Assembly (NCBI RefSeq): GCF_006345805.1
Contig: NC_042998.1
Span: forward strand, 91,078,001 to 91,142,000
DNA length: 64,000 nt
DNA from: Octopus sinensis
Taxonomy: Eukaryota
Direction of reading: 5' to 3'
The stretch's first letter is position 1; each line of letters starts with the position of its first letter. Below the pieces are notes generated by a model, which was given only the letters and a program-made list of their open reading frames with translations, did not search any database and was not told the origin of the DNA. Positions 1 to 62,760 of the stretch are shown piece by piece. The position numbers were made by a program, and so were the translations under genes.

Positions 1-256
1 GTTATTACTGAACAGTTTTTCACGTATATCTGCAAAACTTACAATGACGTCAATTACTACTTATGACTATTGGTGTGTATAAAGTCAATGATTATTGTAT
101 GCGAATTTCTTACGTCATCACTTCATGTGAATTAATGGGTCTGATAATGAAATGATCAAATAAATTGCGGTCACTTAGAAAGTCTGATGATATGGGCACA
201 GAGTTTTATTATAAATATGATAATTTTTTATATTAATTTTCTTCTTGCCTTATCTA

Positions 257-626
<370 letters not shown>

Positions 627-4802: not shown

Positions 4803-5045
4803 CTTGAGGTCAACTTTGCTTGTCATGATCGATAAATAAAGTACCAGTCCTCTACTAGGATCGATTCTCCTACTTCTTTCTGTCTGTTTCTCATTTCTAG
4901 CAAGAGATCTTCTGTGGTCAGACTTGGAGATGGAAAGGCACCGCTCGGTCTACAACTGTCCAAGACAGTACTCTTACAATTTCATCAGAAATTCTGAGAC
5001 CAAGGAAAAGACATTAGTATTTTTATTTTTAAAGAATTTTCTGGC

Positions 5046-5048: not shown

Positions 5049-5364
5049 GTAAACTATAATATTGTTGTTGAATTATTTCTTGTGGTGACACATGATCACT
5101 TACATGTAAAGGAGTTTGGTTGATCGAATCGACTCTAGTTTAATACGATCTTATTCATTCAGTTTTATTATAAATTTGATAACAAACGAATAATGTTTTT
5201 ATAAACACAAACATCAGTTTTTCAATTGTATGACACCTCAACTGTTTGTATCTTTAGATGTAAAAACTTTTCTCCCTTGATGTCTCCGGTTGAGACTTGG
5301 GCGCAGCTCGTAGAAATTAAAGGTACATCATAATTATAATCATGTATTCCTTTATTTCTTTCAG

Positions 5365-5584
5365 AGGGAATGTATCAGTATCCACGTTGGACAAGCAGGT
5401 GTACAAATTGGCAATGCCTGTTGGGAACTCTACTGTCTTGAACACAAAATTCAACCTGATGGTCAAGTACCTTCAGATAAGAAATCGAGGAGAGATGATT
5501 CGTTTAGTACTTTCTTCAGTGAAACTGGAGCTGGGAAGCATGTCCCCAGAGCGGTCTTTGTTGATCTGGAACCAACTGTTGTCG
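5365..5584 (+). CDS. TUBA: Alpha-tubulin exon 2
   Basis: TTTCTTTCAG acceptor and G|GTAAGT donor; translates [73 protein letters not shown]; 220 nt. Confidence 0.97.
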
Positions 5585-6849
5585 GTAAGTATTACAAATA
5601 TCTAAAATTCTGGCATCTCCCGAGTTACAGTATCCTGTATTCTTTTAAATATTGTCGCTATGCGGAATTCTGTAATGCGAAACCTATTTTCTCATTGATT
5701 TCCATATTACAAACTGAGATGCATTCTGACAGAATTCATTCGGAAAAAAGAATACATCTTCTGTGCATGAATTCATCTATTAAAAGATATGATCTATTTC
5801 TTCTTCACTTTGTCTATACACGCTGAATCAGGAGTTTTTGTTGGTTTTTTATTTATCTTTTCAATTTAATGTACCTGTTCATCCGAATGGATTCTACGAT
5901 ATTAAAATATCTAAGCACAGTATGTTTATGTAAGATCATTTGAAAAGAAAAATGTAAGGGAATGAATGAGAATACAGTTACAATACGTATTCATCACAAA
6001 TTATGTTGACTGCAGCGTAAAGAGAATTGGTAAAATAGAAATTACTGAAAGGAAGAGCACTATCTTCTGTTCTGTAGAGAAGGGGTGTCAAACATATGTC
6101 CTGCAGCTGTGTTTAGCCCTCCCCGACTCAATTTTTAAAATAAAAATTATCATTAAATACTTTTTAATTATTATGTTAAATGTGTGTCACTAGCATGCTT
6201 TCAGAGCCGGAGCTCGGCTAGAACCGTGATAACATTAGTACAGATTAGTCGAATCAGTGCTCGTTAGGGGACTTTTTTTTATATCTCAGCCAATGGAAAA
6301 AGCTTTCGAAACCAAATACTAAATGATGTGACCTATTTCCCCTTCACTTTATCTGTAACGTTGAACCAACTTATGTTTCAAATTTACGTATGTGTTTAGC
6401 CAAATGGATTCCAGTGGTGTGAACAATATTGAAAAATTTTACAACTGAAACAATGCCAACTTTCTATCGAGCATTGGTCTTCTCAAGAACTATATACTTT
6501 TATTTGGACAATTTCTGTCTCTGCTTTTTCTCTAGGGATTCTTTCTTAATAATTTATATATACCATATGAATATTTCCACACATCTCTGCGCACAAACTT
6601 TGTTAACACCTCATATTCTTTCCTTTCTTCATTGTTAATAAAGTTATTATGTTTATTGCCCCCTTTATCCATTTACTTTGGTCTACGTTATGAATTAGTT
6701 TTAAGAATAATTGTTATTATCCGACCCTCGGTATCTAGTTTATGATTTAATCCGGTTCTTAAAACCAAACAAGTTTGACACCCCTGTTATTCGTCATCAT
6801 CATCATCATCGTCATTTTCATTGTGACCATCACCATCATCATCATCATC

Positions 6850-8150
6850 TGTATCTGTTGAAGGCGTAAAGAACGTATCCAAAGTTGTTAGGCGTTTACG
6901 ACGTATCTTCTGTTTGTACAGATCAGTGTAAAAGCTGAGCTCATTATGAATTCCTCTAGTTATTTATGTTACGTTCAGGTTTAGGATCATGTTATCAGCA
7001 AAGTCCATTATTTAGCTATATTCTTTAAAGTCGATTCGATCCTAATTCAACCGACGACTTCTTCAAATCTTGCACCATTTTCTAGTCTGGCAATGTTGCA
7101 CCCGACATAGGCTTTCGCCTGAAAAAAAAAACTCTACACGGATAGAAACCCTAACGTTACGGATACAATCTGATTGTATTTTGCCAAACACTATTCTTAG
7201 CTGAGGGTTTCAATTCATACGATGACTCAGCTATAATAATTACAGCTTCTATAATATTAAGCATTTTCTAAAAGTCGAACTATAGGTTTTAACTTACCTA
7301 TCAATTGCATTTACGAGTTATTCTAAGGTAACATATCGATGAAGTTAGCTATCACTTCTTTATCCAAGGAAATTGTGTTCTTGAGGATATATTCAACTCA
7401 TCATCAAAAAGATAATTTATGTTCACTTGTGATTGTCTAAAAGGAACAATACTTTGTTGTAAATATTAATCCTGAGACTATATTTTTCTATAACACAGCA
7501 AAATGTCTGTAAATCAATCTCAGAGAAAGCTCGTTGTATCACCCAAGCCTTCTCATTTGAACACGAAATCAAATGTAGATTACATTATAATAGCCTTTGG
7601 ATGCGTTTCAGTTTTTAGAGTGAACTACAAGTAAGGGGCTTTAATTTCATTCCTCAGCAGTACCCCACCCAGTCATAAAAATGCGTTAGACGATATTTGG
7701 AAGCTTTAAAGACTGGAGCTGATTTTTCTGTACCAATAATCATGAGCTTCCAGAGAATCCCGGTTTCATCAACATCATGCACTTGTTTTAATGTACAACC
7801 TCCTCTAACTAATATTTTGTTCAGCTCCTCGGAATAACTAGTAACAGCTATTTTACAGGACTGGCTGTTTCACTGTTCATTTTAATGTACAAAAATAAAG
7901 TGCCTCTTAAACCTCTCAAATCAGACTTTATTAGCAAGAAATTGCTTTGCATTAGAAGTTACTCGTTCTGCTTTCTGCAAACCGTCGTACAAACTAAGTT
8001 TTCGTTTAAATAGCCTAGGTATTTATCGGCATGTTACGCTTAGGTGTCATCATCGATCCACACACTAAGGAGCTGTTGCATTTTAAGCATCAAATCAGAT
8101 CTAAAAAAGAATATTCGAGGACTTAACAAACTAGTTGTTTGAATAGTTTT
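6850..8150 (-). pseudogene. Decayed Tigger/pogo-family DDE transposase in tubulin intron 2
   Basis: Fragments on - strand with stops and frameshifts: KMQQLLSVWIDD, FERFKRH, EELNKILVRGGCTLKQVHDVDETGILWKLM, EKSAPVFKASKYRLT, MKLKPL, ending RKRLTTLDTFF. Terminal inverted repeats (TIRs) not found. Confidence 0.8.
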
Positions 8151-8700
8151 ATCTTTGATCTAAGTCTTTATTGTCATGTATCATCCTCACCCGTATGTTG
8201 CAAGATTTAACATTTTAGGATGTGGAAGTCATAGGTAGTTTTTGGAAACAACATCTGCAACAACAACAACAGCGACAACAATTTCTGGGTGAAGTGTCTC
8301 TACGACACATCTGCAAAACAAACTAGATTGTCAGTACACCACTGGAGGTTCTTGTTAAAACATGTGGTAGAGGTTGCCAATATTATCTAGGCAAAGGAAG
8401 TTGAGTTTAAAGAAGTAAAAGTGAACAGGGTTAGTGGTGACCCCTAAGAAAGAAGAGAAAGAAAACCTGAGAAATAATGGATGATTCAAGGTAATGACCA
8501 ATATAGCCCCAGATTATTACACTAAGGTGTAATGCAATGAGCCATCGAGTTTTTCACGTTATGTTTTAATCGCCCGTTTCATTTTTCTTTTTTCTAATAA
8601 TCCAAACATGTATTCTTTGGCTAACAAAAAATAAAAGAATCATTTCCTTTAAAATGATTTCAATAACTTCAATTTCAATAACCATCTCAACGTTATATAT

Positions 8701-8743
8701 ATGTATGTGTATACATACATACATACATACATACATACATACA

Positions 8744-8816
<73 letters not shown>
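8701..8816. repeat. (CATA)n/(TA)n microsatellite
   Basis: Direct reading. Other large arrays: (GATA)n 11905-12015, (GA)n/(GT)n 12667-12870, (CT)n/(TA)n/(CA)n 13790-14065, (GTAT)n 15047-15230, (TA)n 40440-40570. Confidence 0.95.
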
Positions 8817-8819
<3 letters not shown>

Positions 8820-10631
8820 ATGAAACTTTTGCGGTCTATTTGAAACGAAATCAAGTCAAAACACATAGGCGAGATACAAGTCGCAATTGTGCAAGGTTCA
8901 AAACCATCTTAAAATTCAATGCTTGTTTGCGTAAAGATGGTAATGCTGATGAAGGGTACCGATAAGGACATGTAGCTTTATGGTCATTGCATATTCAAGC
9001 TTCATCACAGATTCTAACACTTTTATTCTCTCTCATATGCACTCTTCATATCTGCACGCTAAGCTTTGTTTAAAATGTAAATACGTATATAATATTATCT
9101 GTCTTTATAAATTTCTGTATCAGTCTTACTTGCTATAACTGACGATTTAACGTAATTCCCTTGAATACAATTGATTAAATATATCAGCAGCGTGTTAGAA
9201 GGTTACTCTCTTAATCCAGGTTTTAGTTTCCTAAGTATTGGTAGTTGTCCTTTAACACGTTTCTTCGTTAGATATCTAAATAAGAAAATTCTTTATAAGA
9301 GTATTAAACCTGGTCTTCAAATTAGTAATTTAGCTTTCCATTAAAATTCCCCTAATGACTCGAACAGATTAAGAGTATAATTTTTGTCTTACCATTAATA
9401 TTGTGTATGCTATCGTTGTTGACATCGTCATCACGTCAATAGAATCACTATTTAAAACTGCATTTCTTAAAATAATCAGCTTCAAGATTTTTATTGTCAG
9501 ATTTGAGAACTAGAAATAAAATTATAGAGTTGTTAGTAACATTATTTTGTGTTCGATGAAGCAAAATTTTAAAACTAGTTCTATTGGTACCAAAGGAATG
9601 AAAGATTAAACTGGACTGTGATTTTAAGTGTAAGCAATGAGATACTTTAGATAAAGAAATTGCTCAACACCAAACCGGCTTTGATATGTTGGAAAATGAA
9701 TATCTGGAAATTGATATTTTATCAGGCTGTCATAATGGAAGTCATGCAGATTGGAGCTCCAGCTGTTGTAGAATCCATATCATTGATCCAAGGTCTATTT
9801 TTGTTTAAAAAATCTGTTTACAGACTGTCAGTTGTAAAACGCAATCCATACTTAATTTTGTGAGGAGGTATACAATCATTGCATACTCTATAATCACTAC
9901 ATTTGTCTATTAACAATTAATTACGATCTTCAAATTTATTGATTCAGAAGAGAGAATAGTACAAAGTTATAAAGTACTGAAACATCATTTTTGCATAATC
10001 CTTCTTTTTTCTTTTGAACAATACCGGGATTAGAAGAATGCAATTTTAAGCTAATCCATTTCATCATGCGGTATATTATTTGATAAGTGTTCAAAGATTT
10101 AAAACAGCGTTCTTATCATTCAGTCTTAAACCCCACTAGAGAGAGAGTGGGGGGACAGACAGATAGACGAACAGACAGACAAACAGACAAATAGACAGAT
10201 GTTCGACGTGATGAAATGTTCGTATGTTCAGGGTCGGAGCTGAATTCTCGACTGAGTTTCAAATCCCAGTCCGAGTTATTTCATTTCATTTATATCACTG
10301 ATGGTCAAAAGAAAGACATGAACACTATAAAATATTTTTTGATTTCTCTTTATAATTTATAATGTCTCCTACTTATGCCAGATATCAAAGAAAGAAACTA
10401 ATCTTGAATGTTCTTCAACGTTGGAAAAAGAACTAAAGGAATTTCAAAAACAAGAGGTGTTTCTGAAAACAAAAATATATTTTTAAAAAACGGGACATTT
10501 TCTTTATGAAGAACTGAATAAAATCCAATCAAATAGCTATGTATGAATCAATAAAATATGAATGAGAACAGTTTTTATTGACGTTAGCCAAATGTGCAGA
10601 TAATTTCCTCTTAATATGATAAAGAATTTAA

Positions 10632-10836
10632 GGCGACGAGCTGGCAGAATCGTTAACATGCCGGACAAAGTGCTTAGCGGCATTTCGTCAGTCTTTGTTC
10701 TGCGTTTAAATTTCGCCAAGGTCGTCTTCAACTATCGGGGTTTATAAAATAAGTACCAGTTGAGCACTGGAGTCGATGTAATCGGCTCGTTCCTTCCCCA
10801 GAATTGCTGGCCTTGTGCCAAAATTTGAAACCAATA
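10632..10836 (+). mobile_element. SINE family A, full-length, CpG-retaining copy
   Basis: Complete unit GGCGACGAGCTGGCAGAATCG...TTTGAAACCAATA. Confidence 0.85.
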
Positions 10837-11903
10837 TCGTAAAGAATTCATAAAGTTATTGTTAATGTATCATTCTTTATTTAAAAGTGTTGTTCTATAT
10901 TTGATGGGGTTTCAGTGTTGAGAAAGCGTTTTTATTGGTCAATATAATTTTTGCACAGAATTATGAGTAGATTCTTATTGAGGGAAAACTGACTGCGAAA
11001 GATATGTAGCTCCTCTCATAAATATATGTTGCAACAAGATTGCGATCAAGACAGAACACCTACAGATAAGGTATAACAGAATCTCTTTTTCTTTGCGCAA
11101 TAGTAACTCTAACCTGATAGGGAGCCATTTGGATAAAACTTTTACCACGTGATAGGGAAATACTCTGGATTTGTAAACGGCTGGACGAAATTTCTTTGTC
11201 TATTTTTGTTCTTGTGATATGCTAAGATGCATTTTGTAATTCGAAGACTTATAAATTTTCCGTTAGGCTTTCCACATCTCCAGGAAATTGTCTTACTCTA
11301 GATAATTGTAAGGGCGTTAGAAAAATGCCTTGCAGTATTTATACTGGCTCTTTATGTTCTGGTTGCAGACCTCACCTAGGTCAACTTTGTCTTTCTTCCC
11401 TCTGGGACTGATAAAATAGATTACAAGTTAAGAACTGGAATCGAGGGTATCGACCGGCCTCTTCCCCTCAAAATGCTAATCCTGTATCTAAATTAGCAAC
11501 TAATATTGCCATCTCATACCAGACTGGATTCGAACCAGGAAATTACATATACTTTTCGACTAAGACTTGTAATCCACTTATTTATTAGGTCGTTGACATG
11601 AATTTCGTAACAGCTTAATTTTTAGAAAAATCTATGCACCTCATTAGCTCTTAATGACTATATGTGCCAGGTTTTCCCAATGGTTTTTTCGTATTATCTT
11701 AATTTTACTGTATCAGTTTTCTAACCTACGACGCAAGCATTTTGCTTGCCTTGCATTGCCTTAGGGTGTTCAATTCCTGACGAAGTCTTTGGAGCGCCGT
11801 CATGATAAGCGGCTTGTCTTGACATTTTTTAGAACTAGTGGAACGCATCCCTTTCCAGGTTTTGCTGCAGCCGATTTCTTCCAGAGAGGAGAGGGAGAAA
11901 GAG

Positions 11904-11974
<71 letters not shown>

Positions 11975-11983
11975 CAGAGATAG

Positions 11984-12017
<34 letters not shown>

Positions 12018-12685
12018 AGAGAGAGAGAGAGAAAAGAATCTATCCCAGCATAGAACTGGTACTTTCTTTATCGATCACGAAAGAAGAAAAGATACTGTTG
12101 GCCTCTAGTATTTGAATTCTTAAAGCTGAGAGCCAAAAAGAATAACTCAAAGCAATTTACCCAATGTTCTAACGATTCTGCAAATTCGCCACTTTAATCA
12201 CTTTGTAAGACACTCCGATTCACTGACTGAAGTTGATTTCGAAAGTCATATTAATGAGCACTAATTACACTAATAAAATGATTTAATGAAGATCCGCCAT
12301 CGATGATGTTCACGTGCACATATATTCCCCCCTTTTCTCCTTTGCCCTCTCTCTCCTTCCCCCCTCTCTCAGTTACATTTTTGTTAGTTTCCTTTCTGTG
12401 ATTTCGAATCCCTCTTCAATCTTACACTTTTGGACGATTTTAGCAAGCAAAAATCTCTGATGTTAAAAATACAGTAAAATACAAAATGAGGTTAATTGTC
12501 TGGCTAATTATTCCTTGCATGAAAATTGACTGTTGGACACGCAAACAATATCGACAAAATGAAATTCGCTTCTACTTAAAACCATTAATAAAATATGTAT
12601 AATGAAAACCTTTTCAATAATGATTAATCTAGTGAAAACCTATTTTTTACATTTTTAATGTTTTTCCTTTGAGAGAGAGAGAGAA

Positions 12686-12756
<71 letters not shown>

Positions 12757-12790
12757 CAGAGAGATAGGGAGAGAGAGAGAGCGAGAGAGA

Positions 12791-12842
<52 letters not shown>

Positions 12843-13895
12843 GGGAGGGCGTTAAAGAAAGAGAAAACGAGAGAGATCAGTAACCTTGTGCTGAGTTTTA
12901 CTGCCTCGTCTGATATTTTCAGTAGTTGAAAGAATCGTCAAACAAAAGACAAAATTAAATGTAAACTGGGATTAAGGATAAAGAGAGCAGATGTTCTATT
13001 CGAAGCAAGAGGGATGAAAGTTTATTACGGATTAACTCAGCTTAGCACGGTGATTTTAATCAGGTGATATAGATTTGCAGTGTCAACGATTACACGTCAA
13101 AGACAAAATTGTAGGTTTCAAGATAGTTAATCTGGAGAAATGGAAGTACATAAGAGATATGTATTTATTGTTCATCCATACAAAGTGATCAATAGCGTTG
13201 TCGTCATTTGATCCCTCCCACAACTATCATGCCCTCTTTCAGCATTATCAACTTCGACAGCGCACATACGGGGTTGATCAAATCTGCGGATGTTCTGCAG
13301 TATAATAGTGGTTTGTAAGTCACGACAGAAAACATGTCTCACTCTAATCGTATTTCAATTCTTTAAACTGCAGCTGAAGCAAATTTCAGGTGCAAATATG
13401 ACTCAAATATGCGTAATGTTGTCCGAAAATTCAATATTATTTTTGCCTACTCTCCCATAGGTTTCCTCTCCTTAACCCTAAAAAATATAAAGTGCTTCTG
13501 TCTACATTGCAATAGATAAAGTTGATAGAATGTGCTTCAGTCGGTTACAGGAATTTATTTTATCGACATAAGGTGGATCAATATCGAAGTCCACCCTAGT
13601 AACATTTGAATAAAGAATAACGAAGTATCAAATTAAATGCTGTCAAACATTCAGTTCGATGGTTTGGAACAAGGCTTAGCAAACTTATTTGAAGGAGGGT
13701 AGAGCTGGAAATACTTTTATATCTTGCGAACCAAAGCAAATAAATGAAGCCATGTTCATACTATATCAAAGAAACAGCGTGTTTACACACACACTCATCT
13801 CTCTCTCTCTCCCTCTCCCTCTCTCTCTCCCTCCCGCTCTCTCTCTCTCTCACTCTCTCTCTCTCTCTTTCTATCAATCTATGTATCTATGTATC

Positions 13896-13978
<83 letters not shown>

Positions 13979-13996
13979 ATATGTATATATATTTAT

Positions 13997-14051
<55 letters not shown>

Positions 14052-14067
14052 TACATATACACACATA

Positions 14068-14247
14068 CGAGGGGGTGCTGAAAAGTTTGTTTGGAGGCCC
14101 AATCTTTGGAGTTATTTTACAAAAACTTTTAGAAAAACTGAAGGACCGGTGCAGTAAGTAAATCTATGTGGGGAATATGTTGAATAAAATCATAATCAAC
14201 TGATCCTCCTGCATTTTCAAACCCAGGAACTTTTCAACATTCCCTCG
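14068..14247 (+). mobile_element. Internally deleted mariner derivative (MITE), 180 bp
   Basis: TIRs CGAGGGGGTGCTGAAAAGTT / reverse complement CGAGGGAATGTTGAAAAGTT; TA on the left, TG on the right; interior keeps a transposase-like C-terminus (GEYVE*). Confidence 0.75.
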
Positions 14248-15327
14248 TGTATATATTTTAAACAGACTTGTTGTCAGGAAGGAATTGCCATACCTTTAAT
14301 GACATAAAAACCGATATATGCCATGTATGACATATGATACAGTTTTAATTAGTCTGAATGTGGGCGGTTGTGAAAATAATGAACTTAAAGATACAAAATG
14401 TATTTTTAAAGATTAAAATACTACAAGGCTATCTTTAAAACACATACGCATATTTTTAAAATTTTGTCTTGTATAGCGCATGGTTAACCATGTGATTAAA
14501 AGAAATCTGGCTATGACCATTAATATTTTTATACATCAAGGACTACATTAACCCATGTGTTTTTTCTTTTATAAGCCGGTAGGATGTGAATCTAGGTAGA
14601 TTTGGCTGTGTTTTCCTAACCGTTTAGGCGACTACGAAAATTTTACCCTTGTTGGATTGTTACACATATAGTCCTAATTATAGATAGACACAATGATATT
14701 TAGACCCGTAAATGGAGCAATCTAAATCGTAGTAATTTAGGATTAATTAGGATAAATTGCAAAAAAAAAAAAACAAATAAAAAACTCCAGCCGATAGTAA
14801 GGATTGATGCAGATTATTCTGACTTATGATAGTTGATGAAATATAAAGCCTGTAAGAGACTTAATGGTTTCCCAATAATCGTATTAACGACTTCAAACTT
14901 CAATATGGCGGCACAGACATATAACATATAAACTTTATTCTCTTATCGTAGTTTCATGATGTCTACGAGATTAGGATCCAGAATACATTTACATGTCCAT
15001 CTGGAATCAACTTCAAATAGCAATTTATTATTTTGAGATTAGGCGTGTATGTATGTATGTATGTATGTATGTATGTATGTATGTATGTATGTATGTATGT
15101 ATGTATGTATGTATGTATGATGTATGTATGTATTTGTGCGTATGCGTGCATGTATGTGTATATACATGTACAGATATATGCATGTATGTATGTACGTTTG
15201 TATGCTTGTGTATATATGTGTATATATATTTCTTATTTATTGTCACGTTCTAATTTATGCTTTATTAATTCATTTTTTTCGGGTTTTTTTCAAGATATAA
15301 AATATTTATATACGATATTGCTAATGA

Positions 15328-16491
<1,164 letters not shown>

Positions 16492-16689: not shown

Positions 16690-16695
16690 AATAAA
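16690..16695 (+). terminator. Candidate alpha-tubulin polyadenylation signal
   Basis: First AATAAA, about 200 nt after the stop, with a T-rich tract downstream. Confidence 0.45.
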
Positions 16696-24774: not shown

Positions 24775-26049
24775 CGAGGGGCGTTCAATAAGTAATGCCT
24801 CTGACCCACTTCCCATAGCAGTAGAGCAACGAAACTTGGCACAGTTATTAGTCTTTTTCTACATAGGAACCATCCAGAGTTACGCATTTCTCCCATCGTT
24901 TGATGCGGCTCTGGAGACCGTTTATGTAGAAGAACCCAGCTTGGTCCTCCAACCTCAACGTGACTTCAGAAATCAAGGCTGCATCATCTGGGAAACGCTT
25001 TCCTTTCAAAAACAACTTCATGATTGGGAAGAGGTGAAAATCAGAGGGTGCAAGATCAGGAAAGATGGGGAGGAGTTCATAGCCATACGCCTGTGCTTCT
25101 GATCTGGCGACAAGCGAGTTGTGGACCGGAGCGTTGTCCTGCAAGAGGAGGATGCCTTTGCTGATCTTGCCCTGCCTCTTGATTTTGATAACTTCTCTTA
25201 ATTTCCTCAAAAGTGAAGCATAATAGGCTCCTGCAATTGTGGTACCCTTTGCCAGGAAATCTGTCATCACTACTCCGTCCTGGTCCCAGAAGACTGTGAG
25301 CATGACCTTGCCAGCGGAGGGCTGCATCCTTGCCTTCTTTGGAGGGGGTGAGTCACGGTGCTTCCACTGCATTGACTGGGCTTTGGTCTCTGGATCATCG
25401 TGATGGACCCAGGTTTCATCCTGTGTAATCAGTCTTTTGAAAAATTTTGACTCATCTTCTTGGCAAATTCACCCTCGAGCACTCGACGCGTTCTTGCTTC
25501 TGGAAAAGCGTGAGCAACCTGGGAATCCATCTGGCAGACACCTTTTGCATATGCAAATGGTCATGAATGATAGTTTCCACAGACCCGGTACTAATCTTGA
25601 CCTCATGGGCTATTTGGCGAATAATTATGCGTCGATCTTCAAAAATGGCAGCCTCAACTTGACGGACAGATGCCTCATCAATGGCAGAAGGGGGCGACCA
25701 GATCTGGGAGCTGTTTCCACAGAGTTCCGACCATGTTTGAATTCACGATGCCAGCGTTTTACAAGGTCATATGATGGGGCATCATCACCATAAGTTACTT
25801 TCATTTCATCAAAAGTCTCCCGTGGTGTGCGTCCTTTCAAATACAAAAAGTGGATTACTGCTCGACACTCAACAGGCTCCATTTCACACTTGACTCGGTT
25901 CAAACACCTGTAAATCAGAAACCACAATTAATTCAGAGCTGTAATTTGCCACTTACTCTATAGAGATATAAATGATTGCACATGCAAAATTTCAGCTAGA
26001 TCAAACAACTGCAAGTGGGTCAGAGGTATTACTTATTGAACGTCCCTCG
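24775..26049 (-). mobile_element. Near full-length mariner transposon (DD34D), 1275 bp, defective
   Basis: 37-bp TIRs (2 mismatches), TA on both sides; TIR start CGAGGG resembles the irritans/Hsmar2 type. Confidence 0.95.
24848..25882 (-). pseudogene. Mariner transposase, frameshifted
   Basis: MEPVECRAVIHFLYLKG...RSGRP / ARWIPRLL / TQDETWVH / LQDNAPVH / PDLAPSDFHLF; at least two frameshifts, and the HPPYSPDL motif is shortened to PIFPDL. Confidence 0.9.
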
Positions 26050-50472: not shown

Positions 50473-50529
50473 GTGTGTGTGTTGTGAGAGAGAAAGAAAC
50501 TAGAGAATGATTAGAAGTGAGATACGTAC

Positions 50530-50840
50530 TTGCCTTTAGGCCGATGACCCAGATCTTTAATCACCATCTGTTGTCTGGTGAATCGCAGCCATACACTATC
50601 TGTATATATCAGACGACGCAGTTTCCGACAAACACGGCATAGGCGTCCCAAGGAACAAAGATCCAAGTAACGAAACAATAGATAAAGTATATCTTCAGGC
50701 AACTCCATCAATTGCTTTTCTGCATTTAAGCATCGGGTTTGTGTCGAACCCTCGTATGAAGATTGACTTTCGATTGTTGCCATAGGTGATTCCAGGACTC
50801 CATTCTCCGATTGTGGAGGAATCACGAAGTTTTTGAACAT
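50530..50840 (-). CDS. FBXW4: FBXW4-like exon 1 (F-box)
   Basis: F-box LMELPEDILYLLFRYLDLCSLGRLCRVCRKLRRLI; donor AA|GTACGT in phase with exon 2. First true ATG is 50840 (alternative 50783). Nine exons total 1296 nt, 431 aa. Confidence 0.88.
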
Positions 50841-50849
50841 CACAGCCAG

Positions 50850-51390
50850 ACAAAATGTGCCCCTTTGATAGAAGTAAATATATTCCCTCACGGTTATCTG
50901 CGATTTTTCTCATCTTAGACGTCTCTTTTATATATAAATGTTAAACACTGTGGTCAATATTTTAAAACACTTATCGCCATTGTTGTTGCGAACTAAATTA
51001 TGTTTAACGTCAGTTAAATATCGCAGACGAGAGAATATAAATACATTTATTTTATAGACAAAAAAAATCATTGCACGGGTATTTTTCGTATTTCATTTTA
51101 AGTAAAATTGCATTAAATAGACTTCAAATTTAAAAATATTATGTGAATTATTTTCACTTTTGTTTTATTTCGAGATTCTCGTCACTCCCCACTCTCACAT
51201 GTACTTCTTTATTTAAACATTTTTGATTTTCATTGAAGTGAGGTAGGTTATTCTACTTTTTTTTCATCTCACGACCCAGTTTGGTAAATGATCTAATTTG
51301 GATAATCTTCTTAAAACTGGGCACATATATTTATTACTGGTGTTGATATATAAGATCATTCCGTACCACCGGAATATAGCAATAAGTCGA
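50850..51390. promoter_or_regulatory. Probable bidirectional promoter within a CpG-retaining island
   Basis: Lies between the FBXW4 ATG (-) and a candidate + strand ATG 550 bp away; CpG is visibly more frequent over about 49750-52250 than in either flank. Confidence 0.45.
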
Positions 51391-61294: not shown

Positions 61295-62760
61295 ACTTGA
61301 GGGTAGCCTTTGACAGGGTCCCCCGATCCCTTTTCTGGTGGTTAGTGTGGAAACTAGGGATAGATGAGTGATTAGTGAGAGCTGTACAAGCCATATACAG
61401 GAATGCTGTCAGTAAGGTGAGGGTTGGCACCAAGTATAGTGAAGAATTCTGGGTAGGAGTAGGGGTCCACCAAGGATCAGTCCTCAGCCCCCTCTTATTG
61501 ATCATAGTCCTTCAGGCAGTAACAGAGGAATTCAAGACAGGGTGCCCCTGGGAGCTTCTCTATGCTGATGACCTTGCTCTAATAGCTGAATCACTATCAG
61601 AACTAGAGAAGTTTCAGGTGTGGAAGAAAGGTCTAGAGTCAAAGGGCCTTAGAATCAATCTAGCAAAAATCAAAGTCTTAATAAGTAGGGAGGCAGACAA
61701 ATTACAAATCCCTTCAGGTAGATGACCCTGCTCAATCTGTAGAAAAGGCGTATGTAGAAACTCCATAAGATGTACCTGGTGTAAGCTATGGAAACATAAG
61801 AGGTGCAGCAATATCAAAGGAAGGCTAACTGGGAAGATACTTTTTGTGTGTGGCAAATGCTCAGGTGCAATAAACAATGAAAATGTGCAGAAAGCAGCTT
61901 CCATCACATGCCAGGGGGAAAAACTAAAAGTAGTTGATAGCTTCCATTACCTAGGTGACCAAGTCAGTAGTGGGGGTAAATGCTCTGAGAGTGTAGCTGC
62001 TAGAATAAGAATAGCATGGGCAAAGTTCAGAGTGCTCTTACCTCTGCTGGTGACAAAGGGCCTCTCACTCAGAGTAAAAGGTAGACTGTATGACATGTGT
62101 GCAAACAGCCATGCTACATGGCAGTGAAACATTGGCCATGACCGCTGAGGACATGCATAAGCTTGAAAGAAATGAAGCTAATATACTCTGCTTGATGTGT
62201 AATGACAGAGTATAAGTGCCCTGATAGAAAAGTTGGACATAAGAAGCATCAGATGTGGTGCGCAAGAGAGACAACTGCACTGTATGGTTATGTGTTGCAT
62301 ATGGATGTGGACAGCTGTGTGAAAAAATGTCACACCCTAGCAGTAGAGGGAACCTGTGGAAACCTGGGATGAGGTGGTGAATCACAACCTTTGAATGCTG
62401 GGCTTCATGGAGGCGATGACGAGTGATTAAAACCTTTGGAGATATGCTATGCATGAGAAGACCTGGCAAGGCAAGTGAGACTGTAATTGTGGCCTATGCC
62501 AGTGCAGCATAACCAGCCCGTTTGAGAGTACCCTTCAATCATTGGGCAATAAACTGTGCTTGTGAAGACCTGTTGAGTCAAGTGAAGTCATTGTCATGGT
62601 TGTTGCCAGTGCTGCCTGACTGGCTCCCATGCTGATGGCATGTAAAAAGCACCATTCAAGCATGGCCCTCATGCTGGTGGCACATAAAAAGTACCCACTA
62701 TACTCTTGGAGTGGTTGGCATTAGGAAGGGCATCCAGCTGTAGAAACTTTGCCAGTTCAA
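61295..62760 (+). mobile_element. 5'-truncated RTE LINE: frameshifted RT plus 3' UTR
   Basis: AFDRVPR...GVGVHQGSVLSPLL...LLYADDLALIAES...VDSFHYLGD. Confidence 0.92.

What the first reader, a model, noticed from the sequence alone, without database searches (positions are those of the whole stretch)
5446..5510. Alpha-tubulin with a rewritten, basic and shortened K40 loop
Seen: [22 protein letters not shown], where canonical alpha-tubulin has [23 protein letters not shown]. K40 is kept (codon 5479-5481), but the five-residue TIGGG becomes four residues KSRR, and G29 becomes K. The exon is 220 nt rather than the canonical 223. The rest of the protein is highly conserved with an intact frame, so this does not look like decay. 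Established: this luminal loop is the alpha-TAT1 acetylation site and contacts microtubule inner proteins. Inference: a specialised isotype with altered acetylation, a second candidate lysine (K41), an RR/S motif and four extra positive charges in the lumen.
Basis: partly seen in the sequence, partly recalled or inferred. Interest (0 to 1): 0.72.

Follow-up and report, generated by a model that had tools for sequence, protein, structure and literature searches.

The report
Octopus alpha-tubulin with frame-shifted K40 loop
An otherwise almost perfectly conserved octopus alpha-tubulin gene carries a short, strongly basic version of the inner-surface loop that holds the acetylated lysine 40, apparently created when three single-base deletions made the old Gly-rich codons read in another frame; whether it is conserved, expressed or functionally special could not be tested here.

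Summary
Window 5365-5584 (+) is exon 2 of an intact alpha-tubulin gene and 15362-16491 is exon 3. The ATG-only exon 1 lies 21.8 kb upstream, outside the window. The 450-aa product is already in RefSeq as XP_029650996.1, "tubulin alpha-1B chain", Octopus sinensis. It is about 96% identical to mammalian TUBA1B, but reads H-K29[11 protein letters not shown]40-KSRR-DDSF-S. That makes the loop one residue shorter and four charges more positive.

New here: the DNA AAA TCG AGG AGA is the canonical ACA ATC GGA GGA GGA minus three single bases. Against real gastropod DNA this gives 10/12 matches, versus 4/12 with one 3-nt gap (shuffles reach this in 0.4-0.7%). The loop therefore looks like a compensated frameshift, with RR being GGA GGA read as AGG AGA.

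The loop was not found in any cluster representative of a 5.8-billion-protein database, in JGI metagenomes, or in the literature. K29 and T363 (canonical P364) are also near-unique.

Conservation in other octopods, expression and read support could not be tested. Altered acetylation or a changed electrostatic switch is plausible but inferred. Divergent K40 loops are a known kind of isotype variation, so interest is moderate.

The parts
5365..5584 (+). Alpha-tubulin exon 2 (220 nt; codons 2-74 plus the first base of codon 75)
   Evidence: AG acceptor at 5363-5364 and GT donor at 5585-5586. Splice positions are identical to six gastropod/bivalve alpha-tubulin exons of 223 nt.
5446..5448 (+). Codon 29, AAA = Lys, where alpha-tubulins have Gly
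   Evidence: K was seen in 0 of 382 aligned alpha-tubulin domains and G in 376.
5470..5502 (+). The K40 loop, P37-S47 ([11 protein letters not shown]), part of the luminal H1-S2 loop
5479..5481 (+). Codon 40, AAG = Lys (the canonical acetylation site, retained)
5482..5493 (+). Rewritten segment AAA TCG AGG AGA (K41 S42 R43 R44), inferred to be ACA/ACC ATC GGA GGA GGA minus three single bases (compensated frameshift)
   Evidence: derivable from only one TIGGG coding, and only 0.17% of all 12-mers are so derivable; 10/12 matches to Pomacea DNA with dispersed deletions versus 4/12 with one 3-nt gap; shuffles reach 10 or more in 0.4-0.7% of trials. One search shows the mollusc codons.
5585..15361 (+). 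Intron 2 (9.8 kb), rich in microsatellites; holds no alternative exon 2
15362..16491 (+). Exon 3 coding part (rest of codon 75 to Y450, plus stop TAA at 16489-16491)
15379..15381 (+). Codon 81, ATG = Met (canonical T82, H2-S3 loop region)
   Evidence: M was seen in 4 of 383 and T in 306.
16225..16227 (+). Codon 363, ACC = Thr (canonical P364, in the alpha-specific S9-S10 loop)
   Evidence: T was seen in 0 of 170 and P in 168.
16690..16695 (+). First AATAAA after the stop (candidate polyadenylation signal, about 200-nt 3'UTR)

Best explanation
This is an intact nuclear alpha-tubulin isotype gene of Octopus sinensis with three coding exons. The luminal K40 loop was remodelled by a compensated frameshift. 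Three single-base deletions fell in codons 41, 43 and 45 of an ancestral ACA/ACC ATC GGA GGA GGA (T-I-G-G-G). The same DNA now reads AAA TCG AGG AGA (K-S-R-R), and the original frame is restored before D46. Substitutions G29K, M36V and N50S accumulated around it. (Shown: the sequence, gene structure and DNA-level fit. Inferred: the ancestral codons and the order of events.)

Everything needed for folding, GTP binding, dimerisation, polymerisation and C-terminal tail modification is canonical. The protein should therefore co-assemble into microtubules.

It would present a luminal loop that is one residue shorter and lacks the hydrophobic I42 and the Gly-Gly-Gly turn. The loop also carries four more positive charges, two of them arginines that cannot be acetylated.

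The most likely consequence (inferred) has two parts. First, acetylation can no longer neutralise the loop's positive charge, so the proposed K40 'electrostatic switch' is blunted towards a permanently charged, deacetylated-like state near the lateral contact. Second, K40 becomes a poorer or altered substrate for alpha-TAT1 and a changed docking site for luminal proteins.
For: Gene integrity:
- Open frame and conserved splice sites.
- ATG|GTAAGG exon 1 with upstream CCAAT and TATAAAA in L001, and AATAAA after the stop.
- Pfam Tubulin + Tubulin_C and E about 1e-302 to TUBA1B over the full length.
- Exact match to RefSeq XP_029650996.1 on chromosome CM016860.1.

Frameshift origin:
- The 12-mer derives from one TIGGG coding by three 1-nt deletions. 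Only 0.17% of all 12-mers, or 0.07% at window composition, can be so derived. The in-frame route needs at least 5 substitutions.
- Five of the six gastropod/bivalve exon-2 copies read ACC ATC GGA GG[A/C/T] GG[T/C] at these codons; the sixth, a divergent Pomacea copy, reads GTT ACG GGA GGA GGC.
- There are 10/12 matches to Pomacea with dispersed deletions versus 4/12 with a contiguous gap. Composition-preserving shuffles reach this in 0.4-0.7% of trials.

Rarity:
- No other retrieved protein has two or more K/R between K40 and DD.
- No cluster representative carries the loop words.

Functional plausibility from papers:
- Acetyl-K40, T41 and I42 pack on the globular domain and the Gly-rich part makes a tight turn. 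Acetylation is proposed to act as an electrostatic switch on lateral contacts (PMC6535015).
- An 11-mer covering residues 38-48 is a much better ATAT1 substrate than residues 34-43 or SDKT (bioRxiv 10.64898/2026.08.17.745310).
- ATAT1 residues R69, H75 and K102 line the loop-binding groove (PMC11039541).
- K40 loops are ordered by MIPs such as DM10-domain proteins and CFAP52 (PMC11006419).
Against: - No orthologue or paralogue from any cephalopod could be examined, so the ancestral codons are inferred from distant molluscs. The statistical test was devised after seeing the data.
- Three separate 1-nt deletions imply non-functional intermediates.
- There is no expression, proteomic or read-level evidence.
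- The K40 loop is disordered and among the most variable parts of alpha-tubulin. Many 4-residue and partly basic variants exist, so the change may be tolerated rather than functional.
- In doublet microtubules, loss of K40 acetylation barely changes MIP binding (PMC11006419).
Confidence: 0.5

Rival explanations
1. The variant is real but functionally neutral. The H1-S2 loop is disordered and tolerant. In a multigene family, one isotype drifted, by frameshift plus compensation, to a basic loop with no specialised role. Canonical isotypes supply the acetylatable tubulin.
For: The loop is highly variable across alpha-tubulins. One-residue-shorter loops (for example SDKSTAADDSF, SDKLMGGDDSF, SDSSAMGDDSF) and single basic residues (TRGGG, TKGGG, TIGRG) occur in many lineages. 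Anti-acetylated-tubulin antibody labels the nervous system of the squid examined in PMC7259959, so canonical epitopes exist elsewhere in cephalopod genomes.
Against: The change is accompanied by substitutions at nearly invariant positions: G29K (0/382) and P364T (0/170), plus the rarer T82M. By textbook structure all three lie in luminal or lateral loops, which suggests co-adaptation rather than isolated drift. The rest of the protein is under very strong constraint.
Confidence: 0.3
2. Assembly or consensus artefact. The three missing bases are long-read consensus deletions in a paralogous region that short reads polished poorly. Two of them fall in GG pairs and possibly one in a CC pair. The true gene would then have a canonical or near-canonical loop.
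For: The loop differs from the canonical DNA by exactly three single-base deletions. I recall, without checking here, that the assembly GCA_006345805.1 (Li et al. 2020) is PacBio-based. The exact protein is on record from a single contig only.
Against: The deletions sum to exactly 3 and keep the frame. There are none elsewhere in 1,353 coding bases. Deletions alone from the ACC codon seen in other molluscs would give ACA (Thr), not AAA. The neighbouring changes G29K, M36V and N50S, and also T82M and P364T, are substitutions, which indel-type errors do not produce.
Confidence: 0.08
3. A recently silenced or never-expressed gene copy. It would be a young unprocessed pseudogene whose frame happens still to be open.
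For: No expression evidence was obtainable. The introns are very long (21.8 and 9.8 kb) and filled with repeats. The exact protein was not found in any transcript-derived contig of the collection.
Against: The 450-codon frame is open. Splice sites match those conserved in other molluscs. Promoter-like CCAAT/TATA and AATAAA are present. Only about 20 differences from human TUBA1B exist, most of them conservative. A frameshift that had been compensated implies selection to restore the frame.
Confidence: 0.07

Closest known systems
Canonical K40-acetylatable alpha-tubulins (mammalian TUBA1A/TUBA1B, C. elegans MEC-12, Tetrahymena/Chlamydomonas alpha-tubulin)
   Same: About 96% identity over the full length to TUBA1B. 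K40 is retained in an S-D-K context, followed by DDSF. The MREC start, GGGTGSG, the E254 equivalent and the acidic tail ending in EEY are all present. Exon 2 boundaries match other mollusc genes.
   Different: Residues 41-45 are KSRR instead of TIGGG, so the loop is one residue shorter, has no I42 and has no Gly turn. G29 is K. The net charge of residues 28-49 is +1 instead of -3. P364 is T and T82 is M.
Alpha-tubulin isotypes with divergent H1-S2 loops (human TUBA8 and TUBAL3, Drosophila alphaTub67C, C. elegans isotypes other than MEC-12; recalled from memory, plus the divergent loops seen)
   Same: Isotype-specific rewriting of the luminal loop on an otherwise conserved alpha-tubulin. This is the known kind of variation to which the octopus gene belongs.
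   Different: To my recollection, most of those isotypes lose K40 and are divergent elsewhere too. This one keeps K40 and a canonical body and tail, and it gains three basic residues directly after K40. That combination was not seen in 304 retrieved proteins or in any cluster representative.
Compensated frameshifts as a source of new peptide segments (Raes and Van de Peer 2005; Okamura et al. 2006; recalled from memory, not checked here)
   Same: A short internal segment is translated in a shifted frame between nearby indels, with the flanks left in the original frame.
   Different: Here the segment is only four codons long and needs three 1-nt deletions. It lies in one of the most conserved eukaryotic proteins, at a known modification site.

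Membership tests
Alpha-tubulin (Tubulin/FtsZ superfamily) | Tubulin GTPase domain plus tubulin C-terminal domain | tested here: met
   Pfam PF00091 at 1e-61 and PF03953 at 1.4e-52.
Alpha-tubulin (Tubulin/FtsZ superfamily) | Full-length near-identity to solved alpha-tubulin chains rather than to beta or gamma | tested here: met
   Residues 1-450 align to 1-451 of TUBA1B at E = 1.2e-302. All top hits are alpha chains.
Alpha-tubulin (Tubulin/FtsZ superfamily) | Signature motifs: MREC N-terminus, GGGTGSG, the catalytic Glu of DLTEFQ (E254 equivalent), the alpha-specific S9-S10 insertion, and an acidic tail ending in EEY | tested here: met
   All were found. The S9-S10 insertion is present but carries T in place of P364.
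Alpha-tubulin (Tubulin/FtsZ superfamily) | Gene structure shared with other mollusc alpha-tubulin genes (intron after the ATG; intron after the first base of codon 76 in canonical numbering, codon 75 here) | tested here: met
   The same splice positions occur in 6 gene copies from Pomacea, Mya and Batillaria.
K40-acetylated alpha-tubulin (alpha-TAT1/MEC-17 substrate) | Lysine at position 40 preceded by S38-D39 | tested here: met
   P-S-D-K40 is present, with the K40 codon at 5479-5481.
K40-acetylated alpha-tubulin (alpha-TAT1/MEC-17 substrate) | Canonical residues 41-48 (TIGGGDDS) C-terminal to K40, which improve ATAT1 substrate use and shape the acetylated conformation | tested here: not met
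   Residues 41-44 are KSRR and one residue is missing. The role of 38-48 comes, and that of T41/I42/Gly.
K40-acetylated alpha-tubulin (alpha-TAT1/MEC-17 substrate) | K40 is actually acetylated in vivo or in vitro, and an alpha-TAT1 orthologue is present in the species | not testable with these tools
   This needs biochemistry or proteomics.
Compensated frameshift | At DNA level the segment matches the ancestral sequence far better with dispersed indels summing to a multiple of three than with an in-frame gap, and the flanks stay in frame | tested here: met
   10/12 versus 4/12 matches to Pomacea, with shuffles reaching this in 0.4-0.7% of trials. Enumeration gives 0.17% of 12-mers.
Compensated frameshift | Ancestral state documented in a close paralogue or orthologue | not testable with these tools
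   No cephalopod alpha-tubulin DNA other than this gene was reachable. Orthologues are hidden inside 90% clusters.
Pseudogene (processed or decayed) | Stops, uncompensated frameshifts, lost splice sites or loss of introns | tested here: not met
   The 450-codon frame is open. Both introns are retained with GT-AG ends.

The most novel reading that the evidence does not exclude
The basic loop may be a tunable element rather than a fixed one. In coleoid cephalopods, A-to-I editing of the first A of AGG (5488) and AGA (5491) would recode R43 and R44 to Gly-Gly. That would give K-S-G-G, close to the canonical Gly-rich loop. Editing of AAA/AAG could recode K41 or K40. The luminal charge of this isotype could then be set post-transcriptionally, for example by tissue or temperature. 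That would be a second way, besides acetylation, to switch the charge of the microtubule lumen.
Probability: 0.04. Interest if true: 0.8.

Novelty: new variant of a known kind. Interest (0 to 1): 0.4.

Why it matters
K40 acetylation is the only well-established modification on the luminal face of microtubules, and how it changes microtubule mechanics is still debated. A natural alpha-tubulin that keeps K40 but surrounds it with K-S-R-R, on an otherwise canonical body, is a ready-made experiment. It separates the lysine itself from the loop's charge, flexibility and hydrophobic packing.

If the isotype is conserved and expressed in particular octopus tissues, it would point to a lineage-specific use of luminal charge, acting through lateral contacts, protofilament number or luminal partners.

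The likely origin also matters. A four-codon stretch read out of frame is a clean small example of compensated frameshifts creating new sequence inside one of the most constrained eukaryotic proteins.

If reads show an assembly error, the finding disappears.

Tried and rejected
1. Full-length protein search. The top 120 hits were dominated by fused or duplicated models. No near-identical orthologue appears among representatives, because the octopus protein itself sits in a 5,862-member 90% cluster headed by a fish protein.

2. A 74-aa loop-centred query and a synthetic query of ten repeats of residues 18-62. Neither found any representative with the loop.

3. A degenerate DNA scan for [10 protein letters not shown] in JGI metagenomes. 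It gave six hits, none of them tubulin.

4. A literature search for the accession numbers and the peptide gave nothing. The supplement of the octopus brain atlas lists other alpha-tubulin loci (LOC115213416, LOC115213542), but these cannot be linked to this gene.

5. An alternative, mutually exclusive exon 2 with a canonical loop. None was found in the window or in the 52.9-kb locus L001.

6. A second tubulin copy in the window. None was found.

7. An RNA structure that could guide editing. The exon 2 fold has z = +1.0, and no inverted repeat covers 5479-5493.

8. The Szyk et al. 2014 paper on alpha-TAT1 substrate recognition is not held, so its details are not used.

9. Structure prediction was not run. 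The tool returns confidence values and secondary structure rather than coordinates, and the loop is intrinsically disordered, so it would not discriminate between the hypotheses.

Full report
**What is there**

The region 5200-5800 contains a clean exon. The acceptor AG is at 5363-5364, the coding sequence runs 5365-5584 (220 nt), and the donor GT is at 5585-5586. The exon translates as [73 protein letters not shown].

After a 9.8-kb intron, the reading frame continues at 15362 and runs to a TAA at 16489-16491. With an initiator ATG, the product is a 450-residue alpha-tubulin.

The ATG is not in the window. An exact look-up identified the protein as XP_029650996.1 / A0A6P7TPX0, "tubulin alpha-1B chain [Octopus sinensis]". 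The encoding locus is on chromosome CM016860.1 of GCA_006345805.1. It shows an ATG|GTAAGG mini-exon 21.8 kb upstream of exon 2, and window position 1 corresponds to L001 position 26406. A CCAAT box and a TATAAAA lie about 420 and 250 bp upstream of that ATG. An AATAAA follows the stop by about 200 nt.

Pfam finds Tubulin and Tubulin_C. The protein aligns end to end with mammalian TUBA1B at E = 1e-302. MREC, GGGTGSG, the E254-equivalent Glu and the EEY terminus are present.

**The observation**

- K29 is at 5446-5448.
- V36 is at 5467-5469.
- K40 is at 5479-5481.
- K41-S42-R43-R44 are at 5482-5493.
- S49 is at 5506-5508.

The canonical loop [23 protein letters not shown] is the commonest form, with 117 occurrences among the first 254 retrieved proteins.

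Six exon-2 copies from Pomacea, Mya and Batillaria use the same splice positions and are 223 nt, against 220 here. The net charge of residues 28-49 is +1 against -3 for the canonical stretch.

**How unusual it is**

The loop is known to be variable, and this sample confirms it. One-residue-shorter loops and single basic residues (TRGGG, TKGGG, TIGRG) are common. However, no other retrieved protein has two or more K/R between K40 and the DD pair.

Two loop-focused searches of the 5.8-billion-protein database found no representative with the loop. A degenerate DNA scan of JGI metagenomes gave only six non-tubulin chance hits. No paper mentions the accession or the peptide.

Three more substitutions are rare:

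| Position | Residue here | Seen in sample | Usual residue |
|---|---|---|---|
| 29 | K | 0 of 382 | G (376) |
| 363 (canonical P364) | T | 0 of 170 | P (168) |
| 81 (canonical T82) | M | 4 of 383 | T (306) |

By textbook tubulin structure, and in part by PMC6535015, these lie in the H1-S2, S9-S10 and H2-S3 loops. That is the luminal and lateral-contact side, the same face as the K40 loop. I could not verify their spatial proximity with coordinates.

**Where the loop came from**

The DNA of K41-R44 is AAA TCG AGG AGA. Deleting one C and two Gs from ACA ATC GGA GGA GGA, a coding of T-I-G-G-G, gives exactly this string.

By enumeration, it is derivable from only that one coding. Only 0.17% of all 12-mers, or 0.07% at window composition, can be derived from any TIGGG coding by three deletions. 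An in-frame codon loss would need at least five further substitutions.

Five of the six gastropod and bivalve copies read ACC ATC GGA GG[A/C/T] GG[T/C] at these codons, and one divergent Pomacea copy reads GTT ACG GGA GGA GGC. Against Pomacea ACC ATC GGA GGA GGC, the octopus 12-mer matches at 10 of 12 positions with three dispersed single-base gaps. It matches at only 4 of 12 with the contiguous gap that MAFFT drew. Composition-preserving shuffles reach 10 matches in 0.4-0.7% of trials.

So "KSRR" is best read as the old codons translated out of frame. Ser comes from (A)TC-G, and Arg-Arg comes from GGA GGA read as AGG AGA. The frame is restored before D46.

Three cautions apply. The test was post hoc, the comparison species are distant, and three separate deletions imply null intermediates. 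A close paralogue or orthologue is needed to settle it.

**Alternatives examined**

- There is no second exon 2 that could be spliced alternatively, and no other tubulin fragment, in the window or in L001.
- Exon 2 has no unusual RNA structure (z = +1.0), and no inverted repeat covers the loop codons. There is thus no support for, but also no exclusion of, A-to-I recoding. Editing of AGG/AGA would give Gly-Gly.
- An assembly artefact is conceivable, because the difference from canonical DNA is three single-base deletions. It is unlikely for three reasons. The deletions sum to three. There are no others in 1,353 coding bases. The surrounding differences are substitutions.
- Only reads or the O. 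vulgaris assembly can close the artefact question. O. vulgaris diverged about 2.5 My ago and O. bimaculoides about 34 My ago (PMC10700109).

**Likely mechanism**

Shown: an intact alpha-tubulin with a shorter, basic K40 loop. The following steps are inferred.

Cryo-EM and molecular dynamics of acetylated versus deacetylated microtubules indicate that acetyl-K40, T41 and I42 pack onto the globular domain. The Gly-rich part makes a tight turn possible only for glycines. Neutralising K40 is proposed to act as an electrostatic switch that weakens lateral contacts (PMC6535015).

The octopus loop lacks I42 and the glycines. It carries K41, R43 and R44, plus K29 at its base, so acetylating K40 would no longer neutralise it. 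The loop should therefore behave as permanently charged.

ATAT1 uses an 11-mer covering residues 38-48 far better than peptides ending at residue 43 or at T41 (bioRxiv 10.64898/2026.08.17.745310). It binds the loop in a groove lined by R69, H75 and K102 (PMC11039541). A basic 41-44 segment is therefore expected to be a poorer or altered substrate.

K40 loops are also ordered by luminal proteins such as DM10-domain MIPs and CFAP52 (PMC11006419), so docking of such partners may change.

None of this was tested.

**Comparison with what is known**

The gene is a member of the alpha-tubulin family, and every defining feature tested was met. It only partly meets the profile of a K40-acetylatable alpha-tubulin: K40 and S-D-K are present, but residues 41-45 are not canonical.

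Isotypes with divergent H1-S2 loops are a known kind of variation, so this is a new variant of that kind. It is distinguished by keeping K40 and a canonical body while becoming strongly basic, and by its probable frameshift origin.

The gene model itself is already in RefSeq under a generic name. I found no description of the loop in the searchable literature.

**Limits**

Orthologues, paralogues, expression and read support could not be reached with the available collections. These are the decisive next steps.

**Verdict**

The feature is real in the assembly and correctly described, and its origin is now explained. Its functional meaning remains open. Interest is moderate at 0.4.

Noticed in passing
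window 16225-16227 and 15379-15381: Two further rare substitutions occur in the same protein. T replaces the near-invariant P364 (0/170 in the sample) in the alpha-specific S9-S10 loop. M replaces T82 (4/383). Together with K29, they may be co-adapted with the rewritten loop on the luminal or lateral face.
   Followed up: partly
L001 10001-10003 (16.4 kb upstream of window position 1): Exon 1 consists of the ATG only, followed by GTAAGG and a long (ATT)n run. It lies 21.8 kb upstream of exon 2, outside the window. CCAAT sits at about L001 9581 and TATAAAA at about 9754.
   Followed up: partly
window 254-625: A long trinucleotide microsatellite, (CTA)n with about 125 copies and 93% matches, lies in intron 1. 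It creates spurious poly-Thr, poly-Leu and poly-Tyr ORFs.
   Followed up: no
window 8711-8817, 11896-12016, 12671-12847, 13798-14041, 15046-15204: Intron 2 is packed with microsatellites: (ATAC)n, (AGAT)n, (GA)n, (TC)n, (TA)n and (TGTA)n. The last one ends about 160 nt before the exon 3 acceptor.
   Followed up: no
window 24848-25372 (-): An ORF of 174 aa matches Pfam Transposase_1 (a mariner-type partial DDE domain) at E = 1e-21. It is probably a transposon remnant downstream of the tubulin gene.
   Followed up: partly
window 61375-61725 (+): An ORF fragment matches the reverse transcriptase family RVT_1 at E = 1e-10 and contains a YADD motif. It is probably a LINE-type retroelement remnant.
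   Followed up: partly
window 50511-50891 (-): An ORF contains an F-box / F-box-like domain (E = 3e-11). It may be an exon of an F-box protein gene on the minus strand.
   Followed up: partly
window 4957-4970 and 5431-5444: A 14-nt inverted repeat, 93% complementary, pairs intron 1 with exon 2 codons 24-27. It is short and probably a chance match, and it does not cover the loop codons.
   Followed up: no
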